NCBI RefSeq assembly: GCF_000150275.1
Contig: NW_002060953.1
Span: 2,181,670 to 2,245,669, forward strand
From: Trichoplax adhaerens
Taxonomy: Eukaryota; Animalia; Placozoa
Direction: 5' to 3'
DNA: 64,000 bases
Each line of letters opens with the position of its first letter. The stretch's first letter is position 1. The position numbers and the translations under genes are program-made. The notes under the pieces are model-generated. The model ran no database searches. It was not told the DNA's origin and saw only the letters and a list, made by a program, of their open reading frames with translations. This document shows, in pieces, positions 1 through 62,211 of the stretch.

Positions 1-3000
1 ATCTCCATCGCATGTACAGTGTGACCTTACTGATTTTACTCTTTCTACTCTTGGTAACAGTGATCACTGCTTGGCAATTTAAAGCAAGGCGTATGCGATT
101 TTTACATGAAACTGGACTAGCTATGATCTATGGTAAGTCTAATGGAAGGAATGAGGAATAACTTGACTCTCATTTCATCCGTAAATTACCATTTCCTACT
201 AGTTGTACCCAATTACTTTAAATCCTTGTACTTGCTAGCGAGGTAAACAATTAAATCTTCCCTAATACTTAGCATAGCCGTGGATTACTAGGCAGAGTAT
301 TTAGTAGTCCTTAGCACAACTTACTGTATAAACCTCGTTCATAAATAGTAGCAGTTGTGTTTAGCTCGAAATCCTAACGGTAAAACTGAACAAAGCCCAG
401 TATGTACAAACAATAATTACATAATTAATTCTCATCGTAAAACTAGATATCGCTATTGTTCTGCTGATTCAATGATAATGTGATCATTAAAAAACAATAT
501 TATCTGCATTTGCAGGAGTAATCATGGGAGCAATTATTAAATACTCTACACAACCTGATCAGCAGGATTATCCCATACAGTGCTCTTTGAATAAGACTAA
601 CGGTAGTCTTCCGTTGCTGCTGTCTGCAAGCCTTGAAAATGTCAGCTACTCCTATCAATTGCTGGCTATACATGACCGAGAAAGCCCTGCTACAGCAGAA
701 TCCCCATTAGTTGAAACGGTAAGGAAGATTGCAATATCAGCAATAATGGAATAGCAATCATTCAAACCATGATACAGTCAGCTCAGTAACTCTACTTCTA
801 TTCTATGTAAGATAGGATTTATGACAAGTAATTTCAGCAAGTAATTTTATCCGAATTAGTTAATGTTCGATCTAGAAATACTTCTTAATATTTTATTTCT
901 CGAGCTTTCTATATGAGATGTGATTTATGAGAAGTAGTATACAGCAGTTTAAGGCCGTTATTTTAATTGAAATAGTGTAATCTCCGACCTAGCGATCTTC
1001 TTCAATGTTTTACTTTCTCTACCATTATTCAATACCAAATATGACTTACTAAAAGTGAAATACAGTAATTATAACATGCTCTTTCTGTCCAAATAGATGA
1101 TTTTTGATCCAGAAATATTTTTCTATGTTTTGCTTCCTCCGGTTATCTTTTACGCTGGATACAATTTACGACATGTAAGTATTTAAACTCTACATTTTAT
1201 GGATATTATGATAATACTAGGTCTTTTAGCTACAGTGAATAATGAGAGCTATCATTTCTGCTATAGAAGCAAAAAATAGCAGCCTTAACCAGAGTTCTGT
1301 AGCAAAATTTTTTACTGCCCTTTATTATTATTAGAGGCATTTCTTTAGTAACTTTGCGTCAATCCTTTTATACGCAATGCTTGGAACCATTATTTCCTGT
1401 TTTACGATTGGGTAAGTTTTACTCTGTGCCTAAGTATAGAATTATGTGACTTGCCTAAATGCCTACCACCTTAAACTTACTATAAACTGGCTCAGAAGTA
1501 GATTTTTCGGTTTGTTGTTGAATTTAAGAATCAGAAAAAAACATATTTACTGCAATAATATCCCAGCACATAACTTCAGAATTTCGTTGTATTAGTGAAA
1601 GTTTATATGAACGATACATAAATCTATCTATCGAAAGTTTTGATATTCTAACATTAGTTTCCATTACTTTATGTGGCAAGTGCTATCATGTACCTATTTG
1701 TTTCAAACATTCAACCTATCGGCGACTTTGGTTTCATCGACTGTCTGATATTTGGAGCTATGATTTCTGCTACGGATCCTGGTATAGCACTAGCCTAGTG
1801 GATTTTAAAATTACAGGATTGAAATATAGTAAGTACCGTAATATCTAATCGTGATGTGCTTTAATTTTAGTAACTGTTTTGGCAATATTTCACGATTTAC
1901 ACGTTGATTCAAAACTCTACGCTCTGGTTTTTGGCGAAAGTGTCCTAAATGATGCCGTGGCTATTGTACTGTATAGGTATGTACAATAGCTTCTAGGAAA
2001 ATAGTAAACAAGAACTTCTTTGATTAATTAAGTACTGAAATGCCAGACCATAAGTAGCACTATAAGGCGAAATAAAGTTGTAAATTCCATTTTAGCTCGA
2101 TCTTGATTTATTCACCGTACTCGCTGCATAGTGAAAGTGGATTTCATGTTGGTGCCTTGTTTCGATCTATTGCTGGCTTTCTCGGCATATTCGCTGGCTC
2201 TTTTTCCTTGGGCTGCTTACTCGGATTAACGACAGCATTAATATCTTATTGATAGTAATATAAGACATAAAATACCTCTGCTAGACTATATAAGTGATAC
2301 AGTACTGTACGATGTACGATATTATCAATCACAAAGAAACTAACAAACCCTGCTCTTATTTCCTGATGAAAAATCGTTGATGCAATTTTTACCATTTAAT
2401 CAGTACCGTTTGTCACATTTTTGTTAAAAGTTTTATTTAACTCTGTATTAGAATTGTTGCAATATCGCAGCAAGATATTGCATAGCTGTAACAAACGTTC
2501 ATTCATAACGTATTTTACAAAATTATTTTATTATACATGTGAATAGTCTGGGATTGTAGTGATTAGATAAATATATTTCGTGAATCGCTCACGATAATGT
2601 TCTTTGTTTGATCCTTAATAACTCTGTAAATCTCTAAGTTGACAAGAATCCGAGAATTTCCATTATTAGAGACTGCGGTATTTATTATCTTCTCCTATTC
2701 GGCATTTCTCATCGCTGAAGCTCTCCGTTTAACGGGTATTGTATCCTATGCCGGCAGCATCTCCTTATATATTTATGTATATATATTCTATACATTATAG
2801 ATATTTTAAATCGAACCTTTTTACAATGTTCTCTATACTTTCTGCTTCTTTAGGTATTGTAACTATATTGTTTTGTGGAATAACTCAATCCCACTTTACT
2901 TATAAAAATTTATCCGATGAATCCCAGAAAAGAACAAAACAGGTTTATATTTGTTATTTTTACCTAAGAAGTGACCGTATCTATACTACCGATGAAACTA

Positions 3001-4206
3001 AATTTCAAAACATTGACGAAAACCACTTCTAGGCCTTTGAAATTATTAATTTCCTCGCAGAAAATTTCATATTCTCTTATATGGGCCTTTCATTTTTTGT
3101 TTTCCCATACCATCGTTGGTATTTTGGATTTATAGCTTTTTCATTTGTATCTTTATGAAGAATTTGATAATGCTTTTAAAACTAGTGTAAAAATATCTGT
3201 ATTTATCGGAACTATTCAAGCCCTCAACGTATTACCTAGATAGCCATTTTTGTAGGTCGGTTATGCAATATATATCCTCTCAGTTTCATCTTAAATCGGA
3301 CTCGTCGAAATAAGATCAGCTACAATATACAGCATATGATGGTTTTTGCAGGTATAATGGCATTTGGATCGTCTCCTGTTATAGCTATGATATCAATATG
3401 AAACATAATAAAATGTGACGAATTAATTATATTTGTGGTAGGTCTACGCGGTGCTATAGCATTCGCTTTGGCTATTCGTAATACCTCTAGCGAAAGCCGG
3501 CAATTAATGTTTACTACAACATTAATGATTGTATTTGTTACGGTTTTGTTTAATGGAGGTACAACAACTCTAATGCTGCGGTGGTTGAGAATAGAGTAAG
3601 TTTTGTAAATTGCAGTCTAGAAGATTCATTTATATCAATTACACTCTTCATTATTAACTCCTATTAGTCTTGCTGGATCTGAAGATGAAAGGGATCAGGT
3701 ATCAATAATGAATAAATCTAGAAAAGAATTTCAAGAATACTGTACTGAAATTATTACGCTAAACAGTATCTCTCGTAAGTTAAGCATAATGTAAATTGAT
3801 CATTATAGGCTGAAACTGCGCCAGAAACTGCGCCAGAAACTGAGAATCCCAATGCTTCAGTATCATCCAAAGATGGAAATCGCTCATTATTGGCTAGATC
3901 ATTTATAAATTTCGATAAAAAATATCCTAATTTTATTTCCTTGATATCGTGTTACGTAGCAATTGTTTATTAAAGCTCCATGGGAGAGATGATATTCGAA
4001 TTTTGCATTAAACTACTAACGCTCTTGCCAATCTTTTGATAAACTGAGTTGAATTCCTTAATCCATAGCTCAAGTATCTGTCTCCAATATTTGTTCATAG
4101 CTCTAAAAATCCTTTTGAAGGTACTCGATTTCAACGTTGGGGTAACTGTTTTAAGACAATGGATGAAGAAGATCGGGATAATTTGGTGGAAATGGCTAGT
4201 GCATAA
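1..4206 (+). CDS. SLC9A6: Organellar/endosomal Na+/H+ exchanger, NHE6/7/9-like (paralog A), multi-exon, 5' end outside the window
   Basis: Manual splicing gives exons <1-132, 516-718, 1097-1174, 1335-1411, 1681-1781, 1871-1976, 2096-2240, 2630-2735, 2854-2942, 3033-3146, 3240-3351, 3442-3595, 3668-3698, 3809-3921, 4074-4206. Motifs: [101 protein letters not shown]. The symbol denotes the SLC9A6/7/9 clade, not 1:1 orthology. Confidence 0.93.
860..933 (+). pseudogene. Decayed duplicate of the FDPEIFF exon (copy 1)
   Basis: Follows ccgaattag and reads [13 protein letters not shown], then a frameshift and stop; ends before gtagta. 74 nt versus 78 nt for the functional exon at 1097-1174. Confidence 0.6.
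977..1054 (+). pseudogene. Diverged duplicate of the FDPEIFF exon (copy 2)
   Basis: 78 nt, open: [26 protein letters not shown] versus [26 protein letters not shown]. Followed by GT (gtgaaa); the upstream AG (974-975) is 1 nt out of register. Confidence 0.6.
2241..2629 (+). other. U12-type intron, AT-AA termini (paralog A)
   Basis: 5' ATATCTTA; branch TCCTTAAT at 2612-2619; ends ...tgtAA. Restores TAL|[15 protein letters not shown]. Confidence 0.8.
3147..3239 (+). other. U12-type intron, GT-AG (paralog A)
   Basis: 5' GTATCTTT; branch-like CCCTCAAC at 3221-3228, about 11 nt before the acceptor; no polypyrimidine tract. Confidence 0.8.
3922..4073 (+). other. U12-type intron, AT-AA termini (paralog A, last intron)
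   Basis: 5' ATATCCTA; branch TTCCTTAAT at 4054-4062; ends ...ctcAA. Only this junction gives [12 protein letters not shown]. Confidence 0.82.
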
Positions 4207-4739
4207 TCATATTTAGCCCCAATTATAATCTTACTATCTACAACTGAGTTTTTAAGGCATTAAATTAAATTCATAAGCAGAATATATATTGTGCATCTTT
4301 TCAATGAAGTTGCTAAAAATTAAAAAGCTAAAATTTACAGGTAATGGAATTTTTGTGGCCAGGAGAAATAGCCAATAGCTGATATTACTGCAATAATTTA
4401 GTTGTAATTAAACATATTTATACATCTTAGATAGTAACTACTTTAACTTAATAATCGTAGTCGTATTAATTAAAGTTTGCAAAGTAAAGCTCCATAGATT
4501 CATTTATATTTTATTAAAATTGGATTTCATAATTTTTTATCTGAAATCCGTACCAGTACCATTTTGAATGTAACTTCTTGCGGATGTATAATCATCAATG
4601 CTTTAAGTGATGCAGTAAAATTACTATTAGAAAGAGCTCATTTACACTGTTGACTCAGTGCTTTACCTTTACCTATCGATAAAATAATACTTTAGATAAG
4701 CTTGGAGTCTATGCAGTATGCATGCTTTAATGGCAATCC

Positions 4740-5460
4740 TATTGTAATTATCAATTCTATATCACAGTATCAAGGCTCGACCATTCAGGATCGAAATTAC
4801 ATCAATGATGTGCTGTTGTTATATTCCATAGGATATTTGTAGCAAGTTTTCTGTACCAAGCCCGATAGATGAACAATTTAACTTGCTCATATAACTAACG
4901 TCCTAGCAGTTGCAAGTTTCGATTCAACATAGTAGCAAAGTGTTTTGAAGGTATAATAATGAAAGACGAACAAAATGGCCAGTAAAAACATTTCGTATTT
5001 GGCTAATATTCATATTCTATAAGGCATATGTGGGACGCTGTCCGCAGTGAATTCGATTGATTGTAATACTAACCTACTCATGTGACTAAAGTGCAATCTG
5101 AACGGAGCATGATATAACTATGTAGTGATTTATCTAATTATATTGGTAGAATATTTTGAAAGTATAGCAACAAAAAATTAATTAAAGGATGAAAAAAATG
5201 ACCGGAACTTGGCTAATAAATTAATTAAGATAGTTGTAATAATCATATCATAATCATCAATTCTATAAAATAACTCTGTACAGTGTTCGATGGATTAAAA
5301 TATTAATTTGCTCATGTAACTAACGTAAAAACTATTCTGAGTATGGCGTAACAGTGCAGTGATTAGAGCTAATTAGAGTAGTAAAGTACCTGAAAGTATA
5401 ATAATGAAATATTAATTAAACGGCCACCAAAAGGCTCCTATTTGGCTAATATATTGTGTA
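4740..5460. repeat. Degenerate local direct repeats between the NHE paralogs
   Basis: ttgctcat(a/g)taactaacg...gaa(g/a)gtataataatgaaa...tatttggctaatat occurs near 4880-5010 and again near 5305-5455, with a weaker third copy near 5155-5220. Confidence 0.5.
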
Positions 5461-6081
5461 TATTACAACGTATAACTTTCAATGATGTCGTATGGCACTC
5501 ATGTTGCATTAGTTTGGAAGGCAATAGTACTGCTGATGACAATTGATTATACAGTAATTAGATTGTCTCAGAATAACTAAAATGATTCAAGCTTAAATAA
5601 CGTAAATTTTAGAATACTTATACTGTAGAAAGCCCAATACCCCACCTTCTACAGTATTTCATAATACTAATGGCATGAAAGCTCATCTAATCCGCAACGC
5701 TGTGTGAATCATAAGATGTTCTGGACATAAGATATTTTAATGCAAGATCGTAGAGATAATAGTTGTACTTGCACTACTAAATAATTGTTTGAATATTCGT
5801 AAAATCTCCTTATTCACCATATGTTAATGAGTAAATCAAGAATAAAGCACTTGCCTTGCATATAGTACTGTATTGGCAGCTGAAACTGCTTTAATATGTA
5901 AATATTCTAATTATATGGCAGTAGATGATACACACGCCATTATGCAGGGCGTATGGTCATCATCAGTCTTAAGCCCCTGGAATATCGGTGTATTGAGTCT
6001 ATTTCACGGCCTGTACTCATCAGCTATCTCAGTAAACTAAACTTCAACTCCTCCAATTTAGGTGCAGAAATTGAGTACATC

Positions 6082-9000
6082 ATGACGCTATTTTCTTTTC
6101 GTCGTGCTTGGTGGATAGTATTCTTATTTATCTTGACCACGATACCTCCTTCCTTGCAGCATAATCGCGAAAGCATTACCGAAGAGGAAGTAGAACATCA
6201 CCATCATCTATTTCGAAATGTGCTCATCATTATGTTCGTTCTTCTCCTACTCAATATCTTGACAGCTTGGGTGCTGAGAATCTATCATATTGTTATCGTG
6301 CATGAGACGGGACTGGCGATGATATATGGTAAGGAATCTACAATACTTGCAAGAATATGTTTTTCTCTATTAGAACGCCATGTAATCCTATTATTATCAC
6401 GTGGAGATTTCTACCATGTTTTAATAATAAATATGCAATAAACAGACACTTCTTATTACTGTAATTCCAAGTTTGATTTCTGAAGTTATCTTTACATAGA
6501 TTGATCTTGATGATTGCAGCTATTATATTATACTTGATTTAAAATCTGTCGATTCAATCTCAAAACAGATTAAAACATAGCTGGTCGGTACACGATGTCC
6601 TTCGAGCTAAACATTTGTATTTAAATGCCCTACGTAATTGTAAGCCTAAAAGCTTTACTAAAATATAATTCCACAGGCCTGATAACTGGAGCAGTTGTTA
6701 AGTATTCTTTGCCACCTGAGGAGCAAGAAATCTCGAAGGCTTGTATGTTTACTGTGAAGAACGATAACATTCCGGCCATTCTTCATGCAACAATTGATAA
6801 TAAAACGTGTGCCTATGGATTATTAAATGTTTACGATACCGATAACCCTGATTTACCCCAACCACAACTGGTCGATATGGTAAGTTAAACACTACTACAA
6901 AATAAGGCACGTTTAATCTACGCCATGGACGAGAAAATGTTTATTCTTCCATGTATTTGTACTGATGCATGATAGCTTAGTTTGTAACTTGAAATCGGAT
7001 AAATACTAATAACGATAGTATTTCTGAAATCGAATTAGCTCATCTTCAATTCGGAAATCTTTTTCTATATTATGCTTCCTCCAATCATATTCTTTGCTGG
7101 ATACGATTTACGACGCGTAAGTAATACTACATTGACTGCAGATTTATAATATTTATAATAATTACGGCATTAATCAATGTTGAAACTTGTTGTTAAAATT
7201 TAACTCATACATTAGTTATAATCTTTAATGCTCAACAGAACTATAGAGCAGAGTTGCTTCGGCATAACCTATTTAATGGTAACCTTCAAAATATATCAAC
7301 TGCCGATATCTGATTTATAACCTAATGCTACATCTGCAAATAGAGGCATTTCTTTCGCAATTTTGGATCAATTCTTTTCTATGCCATTGTTGGAACCATT
7401 ATTTCCTGTTTTGTCATCAGGTAAGTTAAACATCCAAAGTGTACCTTAGTCTTCTTTTAAAGCCATTAATGAACTACAGTTTGTAGCTAATACATTTAAA
7501 CTCTTTGCTTCATTTTTTTCGAAAAGACGACGTTGAAACTAACGGAGTTCTATCTGTTTATGATCTTCCGTTGTATAAAAATATGGAGATATTACTGATA
7601 AAATTTTCGCAGCTTTAAGATTGTACCGTAAGAATCGAATTAGTTCTATATTTGAATTTACAGCTGGCAAATTAATTGATGAGGCATATTATCCATGACT
7701 AGAATGAACCATGTAGATTTCATATACGTACTCTAAGTATGTGACCATTGTATCAGCGCTTACTTAGTATATCGAATTCCACACGTTATCATACAAGCAA
7801 TATTATTTATGATATTTAAATGGTTTCTATCTATGTCCTAAATGAATCTTCGTAGTTTTTTTTTAAAGTAAATAAATGACAAACAAATTTTGCTAGCAAT
7901 TTGAGCTAAGATTACTAGTGCTGATTTGTTTTTTGAATATTTACAAGGTTTATAAGCTAGAATTGATCTATTGGATATTGTTGCTTGTTTACCATTTAGT
8001 GGCATAATGTATGGATATGTTACAAAAATTTATCCTATTCCTGGTTTTAAATTTGTCGACTGCCTATTATTTGGTGCTATGATTTCAGCAACAGATCCTG
8101 GTATGATCTAAATCTTTTAATTTCTATTACCTAGAATACCAGTTCTGAAGTAGCTAATACTTCTTCTAATTGAAAAATTTTTCATTATTAGTCACTGTCT
8201 TGGCTATTTTTCAACATTTACATGTCGATTCCAAATTGTATGCCTTGGTCTTTGGAGAAAGTGTTCTCAATGATGCAGTCTCTATCGTTTTATATAGGTA
8301 ATTAAGTTCCAAATCTATTAATATGGCTTAGGGGAAATTTGATCTTTATAATTGTAAATTGATCGATTAATAACCTAAAGAGGCATATCTAGATCCTGTC
8401 AACAGCTATGAAAAGGTTCCGTTATCCTATTTTAGTGCTATTTTAACTTATTCACCTGATATGAGCGAAAGCGAAAATGGTTTTGATGGTGCTGCATTCT
8501 TTGAATTACTGCTCAATTTCCTATGGATTTTTCTTGGTTCATTTGGTGTTGGTTGCTTAATGGGCTTATTAACAGCATTAATATCCTACCACGATCATTT
8601 TCATGATAAATATCTTTGTGAAATTAGCTACGACTTATTCACTCTATAATATTAGCTAATTCTTGAAATTATTCGAACAAAAATTCTTACTACTATTGCC
8701 TAATTTTGGATAGTTAAAGATTAGCATCTCACAAATAATTACAGTTGTAGTGCTATCAATTACTCTAAAAGAATCGGTGATTAGTTATCAGTCACGATAT
8801 ATCATAGAAAATTACTTACTTTCTTCCGGAATTCTTAGGAATGCGTAGCAATCGTTTGTTTTCCTAACACTATGCTTACTAATAGTAGGATTAAAAGAGC
8901 TAATTTTAGATAGTCAAGTTATCTTCAGCTAGTAATTATAACTTATTCGATATAATTTATTGAACGCTACTCTAGCAAATAATTTATGTGGATTTGTTCA

Positions 9001-11076
9001 TTTCTCTTTCGATATAGCGATTAATTGTTAATTTGCCTTTCCTTTTGTAGTTATAGTTCTAGCTGAGTTGATACCATTAATTTCATTAAGCTATCTTATG
9101 AGATCTACAACAGTAGTAAATATAGTAATACTAGCGTAAAAGTAGTTTCTTAAGAGTAAATGCTATCCTTATTACCTTCATACTGTCCTTACGGATAACG
9201 GTATGTATAGGATAGTGAGCATACTAGTACTAATATGATATGTGGTTTCGGTATTAATTTAAAGTATCATAAAGGATAACGGTTAACACAGCATTAAAAT
9301 TATAAATCCAACCATTCAAATGTTAATGCTATCCGCTTTTTATTATCCACGTAATATGGTTTCAATATATGCAAACTAATGATAGAATGATAAAACTTTT
9401 GTTCTAAACATCTTCTTTCGATCTCTATTCGGCCTTAATCATTTTGTAAATTACTAAGCTAACCAATATCAAGGAACATCCGATACTGGAAACAGCCATT
9501 TTCATCATCATTTCCTATTTAACTTTTCTCATTGCTGAAGCTTTTCATTTAACAGGTAATTTAGTTTATACAAATTGCTTTTTTGTCTATTCCAGAAGAG
9601 CTCGATTAATAACATGACTTTCTTTTCCACCAGGAATTGTAGCCATTCTATTCTGTGGTATTATCCAATCCCATTATACCTATAAAAATTTATCTGCTGA
9701 ATCTAGAACTAGAACAAAACAAGTTATTTGCCATAGTCGCAAATTTAGAATAAAACTTTCGTTAATTCGTATTATAGCCCCTTTCTTCTTATCATTTCCT
9801 TTATTTATTGTTACAGACTATTGAAATGATCAGCTTCCTAGCTGAAAATGCCGTATTCTCCTATATGGGACTTTCATGTTTCGTTTTCCCCTATCATAGA
9901 TTTTATATGGGATTTGTTGTATTTTCATTTGTATCTTTAAGTGTCTTTTTAGACCTTGTAGCCTATTTAGTGATAACTAACTATTGAAGAACATAAATCT
10001 AGTTCCGATTAATCTTGTTGAAAGTTTCTACAAGCCCTTAACCTTTGAATTAGATCGCAATTTTAACAGGTCGCCTATGCAATATATATCCAATCAGTTT
10101 CATCTTAAATAGAGCTCGTCAAAACAGGATTGGCTACAGGCTTCAGCACATGATGCTTTTTTCTGGTGAGCCGAGTATTGAATTATCTTACTATTTTAGT
10201 ATTTTAAAACAGCAGCATAAGTGATAAGGGTTATTTATTTTCGATTATAGGTCTACGAGGTGCTATCGCCTTCGCTCTGGCTATTCGCAATACATCTAGC
10301 AAAGTTCGTCAACTCATGTTTACAACAACGGTGGTAATTGTATTTATTACAGTCTTATTTAATGGAGGTACAACAACAATGATGTTGCGGTGGCTAAAAA
10401 TCAAGTTAGTATTAGATATTGAATGATATATAAGAATTTATTGCAAATTCATTATTCATTTTATTAATTTCTATCGTCATTGTTAGGGTTGGAATTACCC
10501 AAGATGAAGATGATGACAGCGAGGTGCTAATAACATTATTTATTAGCTGAACTGTTCAGTTTTAATGTAGAATAATATCGCATTAATGAAGCGAGCTTCT
10601 CATGGAAATAATCATTGCTATCATTATAGATTGACTACAGGCAAAATAATGTTTATGCTGCAACATCGTCGAACGCTGCAGATCGTTCACTACTCGCAAA
10701 AATGTGGTTTAGCTTGGATGAGAAATATCCTACTCTTAGCTCTAATTTTTATTTATAGTTGTTTATAACAGCCAACTTTACAAAATACAGCAATCATTTT
10801 ATTGAACCATCCACTTTATTAGATAGCCTTGTCCACGTATTTCGAGTAATTCAGAGTCATTGCCTTAACATCTGGTGTAAGTATTTATCACCAATATTTG
10901 TTCATAGAGGTACCAATCCTTTTGAAGGAACTCGATTCCATCAGTGTGGAGTCTGTTTCAAAACTAAGTATGATGAAGATACTGACCGCAATGAAGATAA
11001 TGATGAAGAAGTAATCTATAAGAATACAAATGATGAGACAAGGATTCGCTTGACCGACGCTGTGGTTAACGCATAA
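6082..11076 (+). CDS. SLC9A6: Organellar/endosomal Na+/H+ exchanger, NHE6/7/9-like (paralog B), 15 exons
   Basis: Signal-peptide-like start [16 protein letters not shown] at 6082 (an in-frame ATG also lies at 5953). Motifs [75 protein letters not shown]. Intron positions match paralog A; stop TAA at 11074-11076. The symbol denotes the clade. Confidence 0.92.
8581..9449 (+). other. U12-type intron, AT-AA termini (paralog B)
   Basis: 5' ATATCCTA; branch GCCTTAAT at 9432-9439; ends ...tgtAA. Restores TAL|[15 protein letters not shown]. Confidence 0.8.
9931..10053 (+). other. U12-type intron, GT-AG (paralog B)
   Basis: 5' GTATCTTT; canonical branch CCCTTAAC at 10035-10042; AG acceptor about 11 nt downstream. 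Confidence 0.85.
10725..10880 (+). other. U12-type intron, AT-AA termini (paralog B, last intron)
   Basis: 5' ATATCCTA; branch GCCTTAAC at 10862-10869; ends ...tgtAA. Gives [12 protein letters not shown]. Confidence 0.82.
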
Positions 11077-13622
11077 CTGTGGGATCTAATAGAGTAAGTA
11101 ACTGATAGTACCTTTTTAAAAATATTCAAATATTAAGAAAAAATGGCCCAACTATTGCCATTTTATTCACATTCTAGTATCAAGATATTAAGTAAAAGGC
11201 GAAATAGCTGGAAGCAAATTTATTTATAGATTGATTGAACTCGGTCAAGGTGAGGACTTCAAAAGTACCATTGGAAATTCGATAACTCGATTAGAGTATG
11301 ATTCAGGCATTATGCTTAAATTCCATTTCCTACTTCGTTCCTGTTTAAGATATTTGCTTTAATTTAATACTTGCCTATGCATAACCAGCTGAATGAGGTA
11401 TTTCTGAGTAAGTCTTGTAGTTTAATAATGACCAAGTCTCCTTGAATGATTGCTATTGCAATTCTTGTTTCTGACGAGATTATGACTACCTTCAGACCTC
11501 CTTGCCTTGCTAATAAAATCTATATGCATATTGCCATTAAATCGGAAAATGGTGTCATATGTTGCATTAGAAAAAATGGAATGGATTACTCAATTTGGCA
11601 GAAGTAATTTCGAAAGAAGGGATTGCTTGATAATGACCATGCCATTAATAGAACGTTATTATAATTGTTTCAATTTTAGATCTTTCCAATGATTAAATGC
11701 TTTCTGACGAATTATTCTTTATTAAATATCGTAACTAAACTAATAAATGGCTACAAAATATTCAGCAGTATACATAATGGATTTTCCTAAAAGATTAGTT
11801 CTCTTTCATGTAATTTACTAGAAAAAATTCCTCCTTAAGATATGCAACATAACGTGAAAAAAACATTATAGTAGGATTGATGAGCTAAAAGGCAGCCTAA
11901 ATCAATGATCTAACAGTAAGTTCTTTACTGAATTGCAGACCATTAAACACCTCTATACTAATTTGTAAGCATAAGTAAATGCTATACCATTGCATATTAG
12001 CTCCCTATAAGTTGGTCTGCTAGTTAAGTAACCATAATTGATTGCATCTATTGCATGATAGTTAAAAATACATGAAATTGAGCTTCAAGTTCACACTATG
12101 TAACTAGGGTGCAGATGTACAGTATAAGAAAGGTATACCATAAATTAGATGAATTCATCATCAATAATAATAATTTAATTTATTCCGAATAAAAAGGTCC
12201 CAAGTTGTTCTCTGAAGTCGCGTTATATGACGTATAAAAATAGTTTTAGTTATAGCCAAAAGTTTAGTCTCAATCTGATCTCATAAGACACGCAGAATTA
12301 TGAGGTAATTTCTATTATTTGGATATAGGGAGAAAAGAAGGTAAACTGTCATACATTAATATGTGCGGTAAATATTAGACCTGTACAATTCATTTCACGG
12401 ACTTAAAAGTGTTTGTCGTAGTTGATCAACACTATTGTACTACTATAGCTATTGAAATCGTACCTCTAATAAATTCATGTCAAATTTAGTTGGGGTGCGG
12501 ACATGATTTGCATGCCATAAATTCGATAATTCTTTCTTTTTAAACTAACATGGACCATTATGGAAAGGGTAAGATACATTGTTAGCCAAAGGCGACTAGT
12601 AAATTAGCATATGACATGATCTAATAGTCACAGCAGGATAGAAACACTTGAGCAAATGACTTATTCTGATTTTATTGATCGATCATATTTGAATCACTTC
12701 GGTAGAATATCCCATATTAAAATTTGTTTGAATACAACACAACATCACAAACATGGATTGTAAGATCATAAAAGTTATTATGTAGATATATTTTATATAA
12801 TTTTTATGCTACATAAAATTGGATTACAATTTGTCTTAACGTCAAGCCAGCAATCAATTGTAATTTTTATATCGTACTGTATTCGCCTGCGGCCATTTAG
12901 TGCATTTATAGACACCTTAATTAAAAAAATAAAGACTTTAAGTATAGTACTGATATCGATACGACTCAGATGATAGTTTCCTAGTGATCGTACCGTCGTA
13001 AACTTAAAAGTTATCAAGACAATATCACAGGATATTATTCAAGTTCCATAACTTTGAGAAAAACAACTGTAATCGCAAATGAAATAGCAAAATCAAGACA
13101 AAAATTGATAGCATCCATTGTATAATATAATTAATATTTACATATTCCAATCAAAATTTTTGTACTCTGAACACATTCTGCAAGTGATCGTTTAGTATAC
13201 AGTAAAATAAATTTAATGAATTACAAGTACAAATATAGTAATTAGGTCAAGTTTCCAAAAAAAAGATAGTATTCGCTTATCAATAAATTTAGGATGTCAT
13301 ATCCACCCCTCTATTTTATACCTATCAATACGATCAAAAAAGTATATTACATGCCTCGTTTGCTCTTCTTTTCTAACTCAATTAGCTTAGAGCATAATAG
13401 ACAATATGTTGCTCACACCGTAGTTGCCTCCATTAGCATATAAAACTGTATATTGGAAATTATGTACCAGTCCTCAAATCAATTTTAGTAAAGTAGTAAT
13501 CATTATACAAAATAGTGCACACGAGTGAGCGGTGAACTTTTGATAATTACAAGTTCAATTAGTTAGATATATTCCTGATGTAAAGTGAATTGGTAATCGG
13601 GACGAAAGGTATCAAGGTAGGC

Positions 13623-22166: not shown

Positions 22167-25100
22167 ATGAAAGCCATCACGTTTAATTCTCTCCTGCTGC
22201 TGTTTGCCGCGGTTGTATTACTTCATTGTATGGCTGTCGTTCAATGCCAGAGTGAACATGGTAGCCAAGATACTCATCAGACCAGCCATGGATCCAATCA
22301 AACGGATCATTCAACCGATGAAGAAGGCCAAATCCGCGTTGCTGGATTTAACTTTGTCCATGTCCAGACACCGTTCATTATCTCAATATTTATAGCTGTG
22401 ATCATTATTTGCAAAATAGGTAAAGTGTGTTCATCGACCTAGCTAAGAGCGTAGATACTCTGCCATACTAGATTGACAACATGATTGGATGCGATGGTCC
22501 AATTCTAATCAGGAATGGACGATAGAGCCAACTGTGATTTATCGTAGCTATTTGTATGAGTAAACATAAACATTCTATGCGGTATATTTCTAACTACGCT
22601 ATTGAAGGTGAAGAAAATGCGACTTTTCAATCGAGTGAGAGTAAATTGACCTTGGTGCAGTAGAGTTAGTGTCAGTAATATACCGTGGCATAGAATGAAT
22701 TCTTCATCACTTGATAATCTACAGTATATCACAACCTGACTATCGTTCCCCATCTTAATTTTCATAAATTTCATACGACTATGAGTCATTCACGCCTTCA
22801 AAAACTTGAAAATATCGTATCCGTATATCACAGTTTTACTATATATATTTCCAAAGTGCTATCTTAAACATTCAAATGATGTTGAAATCATGCATTCGAA
22901 CAATTTTAATCCATCTTTCGATCGAATATTTCGCTAATGACTTCATATAGATTTATTGATACGCCCATCTCGAACATTCATATGGATGACATCATTTCAA
23001 ACTATAGTTGATGATGGCCCCTAACTCATTTTTAGACTATCTGCAGTATCGCCATTGTATCTGTTGTAAATTGAAGTGAATAGTATGATTCATTCCTTAG
23101 ATACACTTTGCTGCTTTCCGTTTCCCTAACCATTTTTTATTTTTATTCTTTTGCTAATTGGCTTGTAGTCTTCCATCGATCAGAGTTCCTAACTTCAACT
23201 ATTCCAGAATCTGTGTAAGTACCGGTAACTGTTTGACTGCCTATTGCATATATCAATGCATTTCAAGCTTTCTACTACCAATCTTGATACATCGATGGAC
23301 CTGGCTGCAGAATCTTTCATTTTGTATCAGCTACTAATGCACTACGACACCTTATACTATGATTATTATTGATTGTTGATAAATTAGACTACTAATCGTC
23401 GTTGGCATAGCTATGGGAGGATTCCTATCGTAAGTTACTATAGCCGCTTAATGGAGAGGATATTAAATGAAATGCAATAACTTCAATAGCTTAAATCACG
23501 ACATCGAGCAGTTTCTGCTAAAATAGAGACTGGCACACACCTAGATGGGGTTCATATCATAAATGGAATGCCAACACTACTATCTTCACAATCTACAAGT
23601 TAAATTTGTAACATTACGATTACCTTTGCTTGTTTGCAATGAGTATATCATCAGATGCGAAATAGAGACTTACAATGGAAAATATTGTCGCCATTGGTTG
23701 TAATATCTTCTGTGTTTGGGTAAATTCAAAATTCAACTAATTAATTGACTGATCTGATGCTTAAACAGAGCCTTCAATGTACAATATTCCTTGGAAACAA
23801 CTATTTTCTTTCAGTTCCTACTACCGCCGTAAGTATGGATTGATAGGTATTAGATATTGCTTAAAATGTAGCATCCATCAATACATGCGAGTATTATACT
23901 TAATTTATTTAATATTCGTAAATCAGAATTTCTCTACCCTAATTGACCTAATTTCAGTACGTTCTAGTACTAATCTATGGATTTACTGCAGTAATGACTC
24001 CGACTTAAAGTAGACGGTCTTTCAGAAATACACTCACTAATCTATCATATCTTCACATACTCAGCATCGTCTGTAGCATCTGTTAAAAGTACTTTTTTAA
24101 TTTTTGATGATGGATTGCTGCTGCAATAATTAATATTATTTCCAACTTGAATCCTACGACAAATAATTTTAAGGGCCAAATCATACTCACAAGATAGCTA
24201 CAGACTTGCCCTAATGTTTAAATTTTTTTATCTGACCAGAACAATTGTTTCTAACATTTTTCCAGTTTAACTAATACTACTTCTGTAGAACATTGCTTAG
24301 TACGAATTCACCTTCAGATGATAAAACCCTCATGGTGACCAATGTATATATATAACGACCGTAAACTGACATTTCTTTATTAATAAATCTAGAATCATGC
24401 TGGAATCTGGATATTTTCTATATAACAAAGTCTTCTTTAGCAATCTTGGCACTATCTTATTATTTGCATTTATTGTAAGTTATTGGTCATATTAAATCAG
24501 CAATAGTCAATGCTTATCACGTTGAGTTTGCTTACTATTTCTCGAAACTAAGTTCTATCATATGTTTGATCATATAGGGGACTTTATTTAATGCAATGGC
24601 AATCGGTTCGTCCGTTATTTTGAACTTATCGGTGCCATTATCTATTTTGTTTTTAATCTATTCTAAAATTACTCCCTAAAAAATAACTTAGTTCTTGGAA
24701 ATTAATATCGGATTACAGTTTATTTTTTTTGTGATTTATGTAATTCTTACCAATCTCGCAATTCTGTAACTTATTTTAAATTACAGGCAGTTCGCTATTT
24801 GGTTGTGTTGTTGGTGGCTTAACAGGAATTGCTCCTAGTAACATGACTTACCTGCACAGTCTGGTATTTGGCAGCTTAATTTCTGCTGTAGATCCAGTAG
24901 CAGTAAGTTCTCTGTTATGCATCATCGTTTCATCGCTTACATTGTACTCTAGCTATAGTTAAATTACTTATTGCATTCTTTCAATTCATTCCATTTTTAG
25001 GTAATTGCAGTATTTGATGACGTCCACGTCAATGAGCAGTTATACTTTTTAGTATTTGGGGAATCATTACTTAATGGTATTTTTTGTCTGAATTTTATTA

Positions 25101-28100
25101 GAGTAACACGTTAAAGCTTTTCAAATGGATCAAGTAATCTTATTGTCTGATACTATGTTATACGTCCATGTTAATTTATTCTTCTAGATGCTGTTACTGT
25201 GGTACTATATAAGTTAATGTACGCATTAAGCCTTTTGCCTACTATCGAAGGCGGGATGGTAAATACGTACCAAGAACTGATACCATTCTTACACCATTCT
25301 TACATTCTAATCTAACTATATTTCTTTCTACTAGGTTGCTCTCGGCATCTTTTCCATGTTTGTTGTCAGTATCGGTGGGATTGTTATTGGTTTGCTTTAT
25401 GGCATGCTGGCGGCATTTTTCACTAAATATACTCGCCATGTTGAAAGTATATTACAGTTTGCTTATTTGCATTATATAAGTCAAATGCATCTAAGTATTA
25501 AGTTCACTATTTCCTAACCAATCCTTCCGCTTGTGTGCTTTACTTTCAGTCTTGGAACCAATGCTTATCCTTGTGATTGCTTATATGTCTTACCTTACAG
25601 CAGAGATGCTTGAATGGTCCGGTATCATGAGGTAAAAAATATCTAAGCTCCTTGACTTCTCAATTGCAAAGACTCATGATAATTGTCTAACAAATTTCTC
25701 AATACGCATTATTTAATATCGTAGTATTGCAACGTGCGGGCTAGCTTTAAAACATTACGCTGAATCCAACATAACTAATGGGTCACTTATAACCTTAAAG
25801 TACTTTCTAAAGTCATTAAGGTAAAGTAAACGAATTGATCACCTGTTTATCTTAATTATTTACTAATGTAAAAAGCCCCTGTCTAGCGTAGTCAACAGAC
25901 ACAGTACTCTGATATAATTATTGTTTCCATTGTAAATACTTTCATTTAGCTCTAGCGCGGAATCTATTATTTTCTTGTTCCTTGGTCTATCATTATTTAA
26001 AGTTAAACATCATTGGGATATTGGCTTTATTCTTTGGACTCTATTGTTTTGCCTAGTATTCCGAATTTTGGGTAAGAAAACCTAGTATCTTATTCATAGA
26101 TACTTTTTTCCTGAATTCATTTCATCATATATAGGTGTTGTGATCTTTACGTTCCTGGTCAATAAATATAGACACCATAAAATTGATATCGTTGATCAAT
26201 TTATTATGGTAAGATTTATATAGAAGCATTGCTCTACATTATTTTGAATTCGAGCTAATAGAAAGGAATCTAAAATTGAATCTCTTTGACCGACGTTAGA
26301 GTTATGGCGGACTTCGAGGAGCTGTAGCATTTTCACTTGCTGTCTTGCTCAATCATGAGAAAGTGCCAGCTAAAGATCTAATGACTACGACGGCTTTAGT
26401 TGTCATTCTATTTACTGTTTTTATACAGGTAGAGTCCTTTAACTGAGTAATATCAACGAGATACCATCATCGATATCGTATTTATTGATATATCATGAAG
26501 TACTACTGTAATAACAAAGATAAATGGGGTTTGTGTAAAACAATTTCTTAATTGTAGGGTAGCACAATTAAACCTTTAGTTAACCTACTACACGTCAAGA
26601 GGAAAGTGACCAAGGATTTTACAATCAATGAACAAATCCAACTTGATGTAATTTTCATTCACATAATGAAGTATTGTATTAACGAAATTAACAGTATTTT
26701 TGTAAAGCGAAACTTGCTTGATGAGAAAACAATTCAAGCATAAAGTTATATTTCTTCTAGGTATTTAATCATATTAAGGCAGGGATAGAAGAAATTACTG
26801 GCCATTATTCTGACAGTTCCTTAAGGGTAAGAAATGAAAATACATCTATTTATTGTATTATCAAAATTTTGGAATGTTGGCATGCTAGATTGTAATCATT
26901 AAGTTACACGATCTAAAATTAGTTTTACTGTAACAGTAGAACAAACATGTAAGACAAGAACTTTACGAAATGAAATCTTTGATAATATAACTTATAATAC
27001 CATAAAATACCGATGGCGCTAGATTTTTATATTTATGCTTACGTATTTGGACTGTTTACCAAATTACAATAATATCATGGAAAGTAAATACATGACTTTA
27101 AAGGGAATATATATCCTATAAGCGTATCAAAGCCTGACGTAGCTTTGCATCAACAACCTCGGGCTTTCGCAGTTACAATTTCACAATTAAAAAGCAATCA
27201 CCTAACTATAAAGCATTTATTTCAATTTGATGAAATTATTACATGCAAGCCTAAAGCCAATCAAATTACATCTTGCATGACTGATGAATGCATAATTATG
27301 ACCATTTCCGTAATAATTATTTTTCTTGTTTATTATGAATGTCATGAACAATTAATTTACCTATTTTTTTTTTGGCTCTTCAATGGTCTACAGAACATAT
27401 GGAATTATTACGATGATAAATACTTTAAAAAGCTTTTGCAACGAAATCCTGAATGTGGAAATTTCGACATAGTCCACCACTACGAGAAATTGCTTTATCA
27501 GTGAGTTTGATTAGCAGAAACCTATTTAAATTAATCAATTAAGTATTGGGTATTATTTAATTCCAGTCTTTGCGCTTCTAAAATGTACTTAATTATAAAG
27601 TATGAGTTTCTAATGCAGAGACGCTGCTAAGAAATTAATGAAATCGGTCAGAAAGGGAGGAACTGAAGAGTAATTTTACCTGCATTTTTATATAATTATA
27701 TTTTCAGTCTATATTATTCCCTTACATCAATAAAATTATTCTTTCTATATTTAATCTCAAATTGAAAATGTTTAACGAATTTTTATATTTCTCTTACACT
27801 TCTCCAATTAACTGGCCTACACGATAAACAAAATGATAGTGAAGATGTTCAGATAGCATTAGTAAGTATTCAATTATTATTGAATTTCATTTGGTGTTGC
27901 GGATGGCAGCATGATTTCTATTACTGTGACTTTACAGATGAGTTTACAGAGTAATCCAGAGGAAGAGCCTCGGAAACATAAACCGGAGAGTACCATGGTG
28001 GCTAGTAAGCCTGAGCAAGCAAGTTCATCAACAGCTCCAGGACAGAGTTCTCATACGGCTGTGACTGTTGAACGGCAGCAATCAACAGGTGACGTATTAA

Positions 28101-62161: not shown

Positions 62162-62211
62162 NNNNNNNNNNNNNNNNNNNNNNNNNNNNNNNNNNNNNNN
62201 NNNNNNNNNNN
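62162..62211. other. Assembly gap (50 N)
   Basis: Run of N. Confidence 1.

What the first reader, a model, noticed from the sequence alone, without database searches (positions are those of the whole stretch)
2241..10880. Four U12-type introns with rare AT-AA ends, conserved between two NHE paralogs
Seen: introns 2241-2629, 3922-4073, 8581-9449 and 10725-10880 start ATATC(C/T)T and carry a CCTTAA(T/C) branch box about 10-11 nt before the junction. The protein frame is restored when they end in AA (tgtAA three times, ctcAA once), and no in-frame AC is available. Established: minor introns are normally AT-AC or GT-AG, and the U12 3' site is set largely by distance from the branch point. Inference: AA at two independent intron positions, kept in both paralogs although the intron bodies have diverged, suggests AT-AA is a tolerated or preferred subtype in this lineage, or is selected as a rate-limiting control. 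Standard gene predictors would mis-model these genes. Caveat: for the first intron pair an in-frame AG lies 9 nt downstream, which would delete the conserved I-S/T-K.
Basis: partly seen in the sequence, partly recalled or inferred. Interest (0 to 1): 0.85.

Follow-up and report, generated by a model that had tools for sequence, protein, structure and literature searches.

The report
AT-AA minor introns, Trichoplax NHE genes
Two neighbouring sodium/proton-exchanger genes of the simple animal Trichoplax each carry two real minor-spliceosome introns that end in AA instead of the usual AC. This is a known rare intron type, but in this genome it looks about as common as the usual type, and it breaks the public gene models.

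Summary
The window (Trichoplax adhaerens) carries two tandem endosomal NHE6/7/9-like genes, 15 exons each, with identical intron positions. Introns 2241-2629, 3922-4073, 8581-9449 and 10725-10880 start ATATC(C/T)T and have a CCTTAAY branch box 11-12 nt before an AA end.

- **RNA evidence:** Spliced contigs from three studies show the junctions of 3922-4073 and 8581-9449 exactly as predicted. They exclude a TA-AG reading of the first and the in-frame AG 9 nt downstream of the second. The other two introns rest on frame, homologue colinearity and paralogy only.
- **Machinery:** U11, U12 and U6atac genes are present.
- **New context:** Two further paralogues lie just upstream. They end in AC at the first position and AA at the second, so AA arose at least twice. 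All four genes also hold a third, probably U12-type, GT-AG intron.
- **Genome sample:** A 3'-end-blind motif scan gave 5 AT-AA, 7 AT-AC and 1 AT-AG outside this family. The animal-wide AT-AA share is 4.9%.

AT-AA introns and U12 introns in NHE genes are already known, so the four introns are new members of a known kind. The lineage-wide enrichment is the interesting part. This scan had already flagged AT-AA introns elsewhere in this genome.

The parts
3..4206 (+). Gene A, an endosomal NHE6/7/9-like Na+/H+ exchanger. Exon 1 starts upstream of the window. Exons: 3-132, 516-718, 1097-1174, 1335-1411, 1681-1781, 1871-1976, 2096-2240, 2630-2735, 2854-2942, 3033-3146, 3240-3351, 3442-3595, 3668-3698, 3809-3921, 4074-4206 (stop).
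   Evidence: Open frame through all exons. Best relatives are NHE6/7/9, Pfam PF00999. The last two exons and the 3' UTR are covered by RNA contigs.
6082..11076 (+). Gene B, the tandem paralogue, with the same 14 intron positions. Exons: 6082-6328, 6677-6879, 7039-7116, 7344-7420, 8000-8100, 8192-8297, 8436-8580, 9450-9555, 9634-9722, 9817-9930, 10054-10165, 10251-10404, 10487-10523, 10630-10724, 10881-11076 (stop).
   Evidence: Open frame. Nine joints are seen in spliced contigs of X4, X5 and X6. P0154 (TRIADDRAFT_29621) is its faulty public model.
2241..2629 (+). Intron A7, a U12-type AT-AA intron of 389 nt. The 5' end is ATATCTT, the branch box CCTTAAT sits at 2613-2619, and the 3' end is tgtAA, 11 nt after the branch A.
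   Evidence: Sequence. The frame is restored only with the AA end. All homologues keep the three residues that the downstream AG would delete. Not tested by RNA.
3922..4073 (+). Intron A14, a U12-type AT-AA intron of 152 nt. The 5' end is ATATCCT, the branch box TCCTTAAT sits at 4055-4062, and the 3' end is ctcAA, 12 nt after the branch A.
   Evidence: Joint 3919>4072 with 2 ambiguous letters in X4, X5 and X6. The mRNA reads five A then G, which fits AT-AA and excludes TA-AG shifted by one base.
8581..9449 (+). Intron B7, a U12-type AT-AA intron of 869 nt. The 5' end is ATATCCT, the branch box CCTTAAT sits at 9433-9439, and the 3' end is tgtAA, 11 nt after the branch A.
   Evidence: Joint 8579>9449 with 3 ambiguous letters in X4 and X5. 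The in-frame AG at 9457-9458 is not the site used in these contigs.
10725..10880 (+). Intron B14, a U12-type AT-AA intron of 156 nt. The 5' end is ATATCCT, the branch box CCTTAAC sits at 10863-10869, and the 3' end is tgtAA, 12 nt after the branch A.
   Evidence: Sequence and frame. Homologue spacing fits. It is the paralogue of the RNA-confirmed A14. Not tested by RNA.
3147..3239 (+). Intron A10, probably a third U12-type intron of the GT-AG subtype. It starts GTATCTTT, has CCCTCAAC 11 nt before the AG, and has no pyrimidine tract.
   Evidence: The same position in paralogue C reads GTATCCTT with TCCTTAAC. Sheth 2006 reports SLC9 genes with three U12 introns. No RNA test.
9931..10053 (+). Intron B10, probably a third U12-type intron of the GT-AG subtype. 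It starts GTATCTTT and has CCCTTAAC 11 nt before the AG.
   Evidence: No RNA test, because it lies outside the laid stretch.

Best explanation
**What the introns are.** The four intervals are genuine A-type minor-spliceosome (U12-dependent) introns. They sit at two ancient intron positions of an endosomal Na+/H+ exchanger gene that was duplicated into four tandem copies in Trichoplax adhaerens. Copies D and C lie just upstream on the minus strand. Copies A and B lie in the window.

**How they are spliced (inferred from established knowledge of the minor spliceosome).**
- U11 reads the ATATCCT 5' end.
- U12 snRNA pairs with the CCTTAAY box. Its branch-pairing sequence is canonical in this genome.
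- The 3' cut falls at the first suitable (T)A-N dinucleotide 11-12 nt past the branch A.
- For AT- introns the last base need not be C, so AA is used.

**How AA arose (inferred).** AA came from AC by a C-to-A change at least twice in this family. The first change happened at the C-terminal position before the four-way duplication. The second happened at the mid-gene position in the ancestor of A and B, while C and D still end gcAC there.

**Why it persists (inferred).** In this AT-rich genome (34% G+C) the last base appears nearly free to be A or C, so AT-AA is about as frequent as AT-AC genome-wide.

**What is shown and what is not.** The borders are shown by RNA for 3922-4073 and 8581-9449. 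U12 dependence, the ancestral state and the neutrality of the change are inferred.
For: - **Motifs and distances:**
- **Frame:** Open frames across all 15 exons in both genes.
- **RNA:** Spliced contigs from three studies give the exact junctions for A14 and B7. The same contigs carry eight GT-AG joints.
- **Homologue colinearity:** Homologues from other animals keep [ILMF]-[ST]-K at the first junction and the same spacing at the second.
- **snRNAs:** U12 (97 bits, canonical branch-pairing stretch), U6atac (105 bits) and U11 (99 bits) are present. A CENATAC homologue is present too.
- **Paralogues C and D:** AC at position 1 and AA at position 2. The identity matrix gives the split AB|CD.
- **Literature:** The 3' base of minor introns varies (AT-AN class). 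AT-AA is the commonest non-canonical minor type. NHX5/6 and NHE6/7 share two AT-AC introns. SLC9 genes hold up to three U12 introns.
- **Genome sample:** ATATCCTT...TCCTTAAY gave 83 hits against 66 control, and the SCCTTAAY variant 37 against 26. After classing by frame and G+C contrast, the tally outside the NHE family was 5 AT-AA, 7 AT-AC and 1 AT-AG.
- **Independent check on one call:** One AA call is colinear on the Pfam Ras profile. The upstream exon ends at position 59, the split codon is 60, and the downstream exon starts at 61.
- **Statistics:** The probability of at least 5 AA in 12 at the animal baseline of 4.9% is 1.6e-4.
Against: - Junctions A7 and B14 were not seen in RNA.
- Each joint is ambiguous by 2-3 letters. 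AT-AA is chosen over AA-TC, AA-CA, TA-AA or AT-AT only because it matches the U12 5' consensus.
- Contigs show the dominant form only. Minor use of the downstream AG, or intron retention, cannot be excluded.
- U12 dependence itself is not tested.
- The genome tally is small. It rests on my frame and homology calls, with no RNA check outside this window. Three candidates stayed unresolved (L055, L122, L123).
- It covers only short introns with perfect motifs.
- AC as the ancestral state comes from a paper's statement about plants and humans. I could not compare intron positions myself.
Confidence: 0.85

Rival explanations
1. Placozoan 3' splice-site recognition itself has shifted, for example through a change in the ZRSR2-like 3' site factor, Prp8 or the U6atac region. 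Under this reading A is read as well as, or better than, C at the last intron base. The AT-AA excess would then be a machinery trait rather than drift under AT-biased mutation.
For: AA is about as frequent as AC, whereas AT-AT was not seen among the resolved calls and AT-AG once. That is not the pattern expected if any base were free in a 34% G+C genome. U6atac carries GCCGA where most species have AAGGA, a variant noted in PMC2396436.
Against: The U6atac variant is shared with cnidarians, sponges and others, so it is not specific to this lineage. The U12 branch-pairing stretch is canonical. AA and AC introns share the same preceding context and the same 10-12 nt distance, as simple C-to-A substitution predicts. 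No protein factor was examined.
Confidence: 0.25
2. The AA ends are kept by selection as a brake. Under this reading AT-AA introns splice slowly, and that sets the expression level of these exchangers.
For: [quoted passage not shown] AA is retained in all four paralogues at the second position.
Against: Nothing here measures rate. Intron-covering contigs in X4 are at background depth (about 3-7, against 43-102 for the spliced form), the same as intergenic DNA. The same AA end occurs in unrelated genes, and paralogues C and D use AC at the first position. Both points argue against a gene-specific design.
Confidence: 0.1
3. Intron A7 (2241-2629) is really AT-AG. It would be cut at the in-frame AG at 2637-2638, 20 nt from the branch box, which drops three residues.
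For: The AG is in frame. No RNA was laid on this intron.
Against: Its paralogue B7 has the same arrangement and uses the AA site in contigs of two studies. All homologues inspected keep the three residues. A distance of 20 nt is outside the 10-12 nt seen for nearly all other introns here.
Confidence: 0.05
4. The borders are mis-assigned: the introns would be TA-AG or otherwise odd major-spliceosome introns shifted by one base, which gives the same protein for A14 and B14.
For: Shifting A14 or B14 by +1 gives TA...AG and still encodes lysine.
Against: The A14 contigs read five A followed by G, not six A followed by T, and the joint allows only shifts of 0 to +2. There is no pyrimidine tract, and the U12 5' and branch motifs are perfect.
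Confidence: 0.02

Closest known systems
AT-AA subtype of U12-type (minor) introns, part of the A-type or AT-AN class (Levine & Durbin 2001 and Dietrich 2005 as cited in PMC8280824; Sheth 2006 PMC1557818; Larue & Roy 2023 PMC10639083)
   Same: The 5' end is ATATCCT, a TCCTTAAC-like branch box lies 10-12 nt from the 3' end, there is no pyrimidine tract, and the last base is A instead of C.
   Different: Elsewhere AT-AA is about 1% of minor introns and 4.9% of AT-AA plus AT-AC in animals. Human has 3 and mouse has 4. In my sample of this genome it is about 40%.
The two AT-AC introns shared by Arabidopsis NHX5/NHX6 and human NHE6/NHE7, and the SLC9 genes with three U12 introns (Zhu & Brendel 2003 as cited in bioRxiv 10.1101/2020.10.19.345900; Sheth 2006)
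   Same: The same protein clade (endosomal CPA1 exchangers), with two A-type minor introns per gene plus a third U12-type intron. Multiple minor introns sit in one gene.
   Different: Those introns are reported as AT-AC. Here six of eight end in AA.
Non-canonical U12 introns of Physarum polycephalum (bioRxiv 10.1101/2020.10.12.336362)
   Same: A lineage in which AT-AA and AT-AG minor introns are numerous and conserved between paralogues.
   Different: Physarum has a vastly expanded minor-intron set with an altered branch motif and a matching U12 change. Here the U12 snRNA and the branch box are canonical, and only the last base differs.

Membership tests
U12-type (minor spliceosome) intron, A-type | Extended 5' splice-site consensus /ATATCCTT at the first intron base | tested here: met
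   ATATCCT three times and ATATCTT once, exactly at the frame-restoring exon end.
U12-type (minor spliceosome) intron, A-type | TCCTTAAC-like branch box about 10-15 nt upstream of the 3' end, with no polypyrimidine tract | tested here: met
   CCTTAAT or CCTTAAC, with the intron end 11, 12, 11 and 12 nt after the second A.
U12-type (minor spliceosome) intron, A-type | The organism has the minor spliceosomal snRNAs | tested here: met
   U12 97 bits, U6atac 105 bits and U11 99 bits, all above Rfam cut-offs. U4atac was not searched.
U12-type (minor spliceosome) intron, A-type | The interval is removed from mRNA at these borders | tested here: met
   Met for 3922-4073 (X4, X5, X6) and 8581-9449 (X4, X5). 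Not tested for 2241-2629 and 10725-10880.
U12-type (minor spliceosome) intron, A-type | Splicing depends on U11, U12 and U6atac | not testable with these tools
   Needs snRNA knock-down or blocking oligonucleotides in Trichoplax or a heterologous system.
AT-AA subtype | First two bases AT and last two bases AA | tested here: met
   Compatible with the joints. The alternative placements (AA-TC, AA-CA, TA-AA, AT-AT) give the same mRNA and are set aside only on the 5' consensus.
Ancient NHE/NHX minor-intron positions (plants to humans) | Same codon position and phase as the AT-AC introns of NHX5/6 and NHE6/7 | not tested
   Known only from a statement in the literature. No genomic sequence of other eukaryotes could be fetched.
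Endosomal Na+/H+ exchanger (CPA1, NHE6/7/9 clade) | Na_H_Exchanger domain, with closest relatives annotated NHE6/7/9 | tested here: met
   PF00999 is on record for P0001 and P0154. Top hits outside placozoans are NHE6/7/9 of cnidarians, echinoderms and vertebrates at 39-47% identity.

The most novel reading that the evidence does not exclude
In placozoans the minor spliceosome treats A and C as near-equivalent last bases of A-type introns. AT-AA would then be a major class, roughly 40-50% of AT- introns, instead of the roughly 5% seen across animals. The cause would be either relaxed constraint under AT-biased mutation or a lineage-specific change in 3' site recognition. Annotation-based surveys would have missed this, because every public placozoan gene model fails at these introns.
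Probability: 0.6. Interest if true: 0.65.

Novelty: new member of a known kind. Interest (0 to 1): 0.5.

Why it matters
- **Annotation.** All public models of these four exchanger genes are wrong at the minor introns. The same will hold for every AT-AA host gene in placozoan genomes. Predictors need AT-AN minor introns switched on for this phylum.
- **Mechanism.** If AT-AA really rivals AT-AC here, Trichoplax is a natural experiment on what the last intron base does in minor splicing. It has the same U12 snRNA and the same branch box but a different end. This makes the question of how the minor 3' site is chosen (by distance or by base identity) testable with ordinary RNA-seq and minigenes.
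- **Evolution.** The four paralogues catch an AC-to-AA switch between gene copies.

Tried and rejected
- **Rfam scan of the window:** Nothing found.
- **RNA for all four junctions:** Read laying allows one call of at most 6,000 letters. I chose 3760-9740, which covers one intron of each position and both genes, so A7 and B14 stayed untested. The 'goes back 9722>4072' joint is gene B's last exon aligning to gene A's. It cannot tell spliced from unspliced B14, so I do not use it.
- **Transcript-derived proteins:** I looked for proteins spanning the junctions in the large protein sets. Only faulty genomic models turned up.
- **Joined proteins:** Spliced proteins were never assembled for a search. 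All searches were exon by exon, by reference, or used database proteins.
- I redid it from coordinates.
- **Other U12-like motif pairs in the window:** The pairs at 51173-51088, 40004-39764 and 38823-38641 on the minus strand have no coding flanks.
- **Motif hits rejected as introns:** L014, L037, L059 and L080 (open frame runs through), L056 (tandem repeat), L012 and L021 (repeat), and L026 and L085 (motif upstream of an ordinary exon or start codon).
- **Pfam on most short exon peptides:** No hit.
- **Supplement of PMC10639083:** It holds no per-species Trichoplax data.
Full report
**Where this is.** The window is G000:C1404:2181670-2245669 of a 105.6-Mb, 34% G+C genome. Database proteins encoded here are named Trichoplax adhaerens: P0154 is TRIADDRAFT_29621. 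Positions 1-11100 hold two tandem plus-strand genes for endosomal Na+/H+ exchangers of the NHE6/7/9 clade (Pfam PF00999). I built both models by hand. Each has 15 exons with identical intron positions and phases, and both read open through every exon. Gene A's first exon starts upstream of the window.

**The observation.**
- Eleven introns per gene are plain GT-AG.
- One more is GT-AG with U12-like signals (described below).
- Those intervals start ATATCTT (2241) or ATATCCT (3922, 8581, 10725).
- Each carries CCTTAAT or CCTTAAC, so that the intron ends 11, 12, 11 and 12 nt after the second A of the box.
- They end tgtAA, ctcAA, tgtAA and tgtAA.
- No in-frame AC is within reach.

**RNA evidence.** One read-laying run was allowed, so I laid 3760-9740. 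That stretch holds one intron of each position and parts of both genes.
- Contigs of X4, X5 and X6 (three studies) join 3919 to 4072, with 2 letters fitting both sides.
- X4 and X5 join 8579 to 9449, with 3 letters fitting both sides.
- For 3922-4073 the mRNA reads five A then G. This excludes the one-base-shifted TA-AG reading, which would encode the same protein.
- For 8581-9449 the AA site is used, not the AG at 9458.
- The same contigs carry eight GT-AG joints of gene B, so they come from spliced RNA.
- Intron-covering contigs in X4 are at the same low depth as intergenic ones, so there is no sign of marked retention. Contigs cannot quantify this, however.

**Homology.** I searched exon by exon.
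- One exon and then the public model P0001 brought in exchangers from cnidarians, echinoderms, hemichordates and vertebrates.
- All homologues inspected keep three residues of the form [ILMF]-[ST]-K where the first junction falls, and the same spacing around the second. The AA borders are therefore colinear, and the downstream AG would delete conserved residues.
- The public models fail exactly at these introns. P0001 skips four exons.
- P0154 reads into intron B7 and stops early.
- P0152, P0153 and P0155 also misread the introns.

**Machinery.** The genome has U12 (97 bits), U6atac (105 bits) and U11 (99 bits). The U12 branch-pairing stretch is canonical. U6atac carries GCCGA instead of AAGGA, a variant already described for Trichoplax, cnidarians and others (PMC2396436). 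A CENATAC homologue is present.

**Two more paralogues.** A search of the genome with P0152 found genes D (C1404:2165334-2169382) and C (2173425-2177629) on the minus strand, just upstream of gene A. I fetched them as L008 and L009.

| Intron position | Gene A | Gene B | Gene C | Gene D |
|---|---|---|---|---|
| First position (mid-gene) | AA | AA | AC (gcAC) | AC (gcAC) |
| Second position (C-terminal) | AA | AA | AA | AA |

- At the first position, C and D have perfect ATATCCTT starts and the same 11-nt distance.
- At the second position, gene C's 5' end is ATATCCA.
- Exon-wise identities give the four-point split AB|CD.
- The four AA introns of the finding therefore stem from two events. 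One is older than the family. The other lies in the stem of A and B.
- A paper states that Arabidopsis NHX5/6 and human NHE6/7 share two AT-AC introns. If these are the same positions, AC is ancestral.

**A third minor intron.** The intron between exons 10 and 11 starts GTATCTTT (A, B), GTATCCTT (C) or GTATCCTC (D). It has CCCTCAAC, CCCTTAAC, TCCTTAAC or TCCTTTAC 11-12 nt before its AG, with no pyrimidine tract. It is probably a U12-type GT-AG intron. This matches the report that SLC9 genes are the only human and mouse genes with three U12 introns.

**Is AT-AA special in this lineage?** Notes of this scan list many AT-AA candidates elsewhere in this genome. I took that as a lead and tested it with a sample that is blind to the 3' end.

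*Scans.*

| Pattern | Hits | Reversed control |
|---|---|---|
| ATATCCTT, gap 40-220, TCCTTAAY | 83 | 66 |
| ATATCCTT, gap 50-130, SCCTTAAY | 37 | 26 |
| ATATCCTT, gap 50-130, ACCTTAAY | 26 | 27 |

The third scan showed no excess beyond NHE genes C and D.

*Method.* I fetched all hits of the first two scans. I classed them by G+C contrast, flanking open frames and the in-frame 3' options.

*Tally outside the NHE family.*

| End | Count | Loci |
|---|---|---|
| AT-AC | 7 | L081, L068, L078, L031, L024, L119, L100 |
| AT-AA | 5 | L033, L065, L035, L028, L054 |
| AT-AG | 1 | L057, in a PLC gene |
| Doubtful | 1 | L061 |
| Unresolved | 3 | L055, L122, L123 |

*Support for the AA calls.*
- Four of the AA ends lie 10-12 nt from the branch A, like the AC ends, and follow the same preceding bases.
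- The L054 call (Rab-like GTPase) lies 20 nt from the box. It is colinear on the Pfam Ras profile: position 59, then the split codon, then position 61.
- The L028 call splits the conserved phosphatase motif of PP6. That motif comes from my own knowledge of the family, not from a tool.

*Baseline and significance.* In animals, 823 AT-AA stand against 16,044 AT-AC, a share of 4.9%. Five or more AA in 12 then has probability 1.6e-4. Even 3 of 10 gives 0.011.

*Limits.* The sample is small and has no RNA check. It covers only short introns with perfect motifs.

**What is known.** The 3' base of minor introns varies (AT-AN class). AT-AA is the commonest non-canonical minor type in animals and plants. 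Human has 3 such introns, mouse 4 and Arabidopsis 1. In Physarum, AT-AA makes up 27% of non-canonical introns, most of which are U12-type. I found no paper on minor-intron ends in Trichoplax.

**Verdict.** The four introns are real A-type minor introns with AA ends. They are new members of a known, rare subtype, sitting in a gene family long known for multiple U12 introns. The rate-control reading is untested.

Noticed in passing
window 3147-3239 and 9931-10053; L009 and L008 (reverse strand) at the same exon 10/11 position: A third intron in all four NHE paralogues has U12-type signals of the GT-AG subtype: GTATCYTT at the start and a CCTTAAC-like box 11-12 nt before the AG.
   Followed up: partly
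G000:C1404:2165334-2169382 (gene D) and 2173425-2177629 (gene C), minus strand, upstream of the window (L008, L009): Two more NHE paralogues lie head-to-head with gene A. They keep AC at the first minor-intron position and AA at the second.
   Followed up: yes
window about 24771-26428, plus strand: A more divergent Na+/H+ exchanger-like gene (27-73% identity per exon hit to NHE proteins) lies 14 kb downstream of gene B.
   Followed up: no
L002 = G000:C1402:437964-441092 (U6atac at 439464-439592, minus strand): The full-length U6atac gene is followed within 1.1 kb by five truncated copies of its 3' part. The full copy has GCCGA where most species have AAGGA.
   Followed up: partly
P0001, P0154 (TRIADDRAFT_29621), P0153 (TRIADDRAFT_11431), P0155 (TRIADDRAFT_11627), P0152 (Trichoplax sp. 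H2): Every public protein model of these four genes is wrong at the minor introns. The faults are skipped exons, read-through into introns and premature ends.
   Followed up: yes
L028, L033, L035, L054, L065 (AT-AA) and L057 (AT-AG): Probable non-canonical minor introns in unrelated genes: PP6-type phosphatase, an ion-channel-like gene, an unnamed gene, a Rab-like GTPase, a DEAD-box helicase, and a phospholipase C.
   Followed up: partly
L056 = G000:C1411:3642954-3645007: A tandem repeat in which five successive units each contain ATATCCTT and TCCTTAAC about 170 nt apart. These mimic minor-intron signals but have no coding flanks.
   Followed up: no
window 4548-6035, run X7 (organism B): Run X7 covers intergenic DNA and shows no spliced joints, so it behaves like genomic DNA of a close strain. 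It has scattered single-base differences and a 5-base deletion at 4806.
   Followed up: no
window 62162-62211: A run of 50 N, which is an assembly gap.
   Followed up: no
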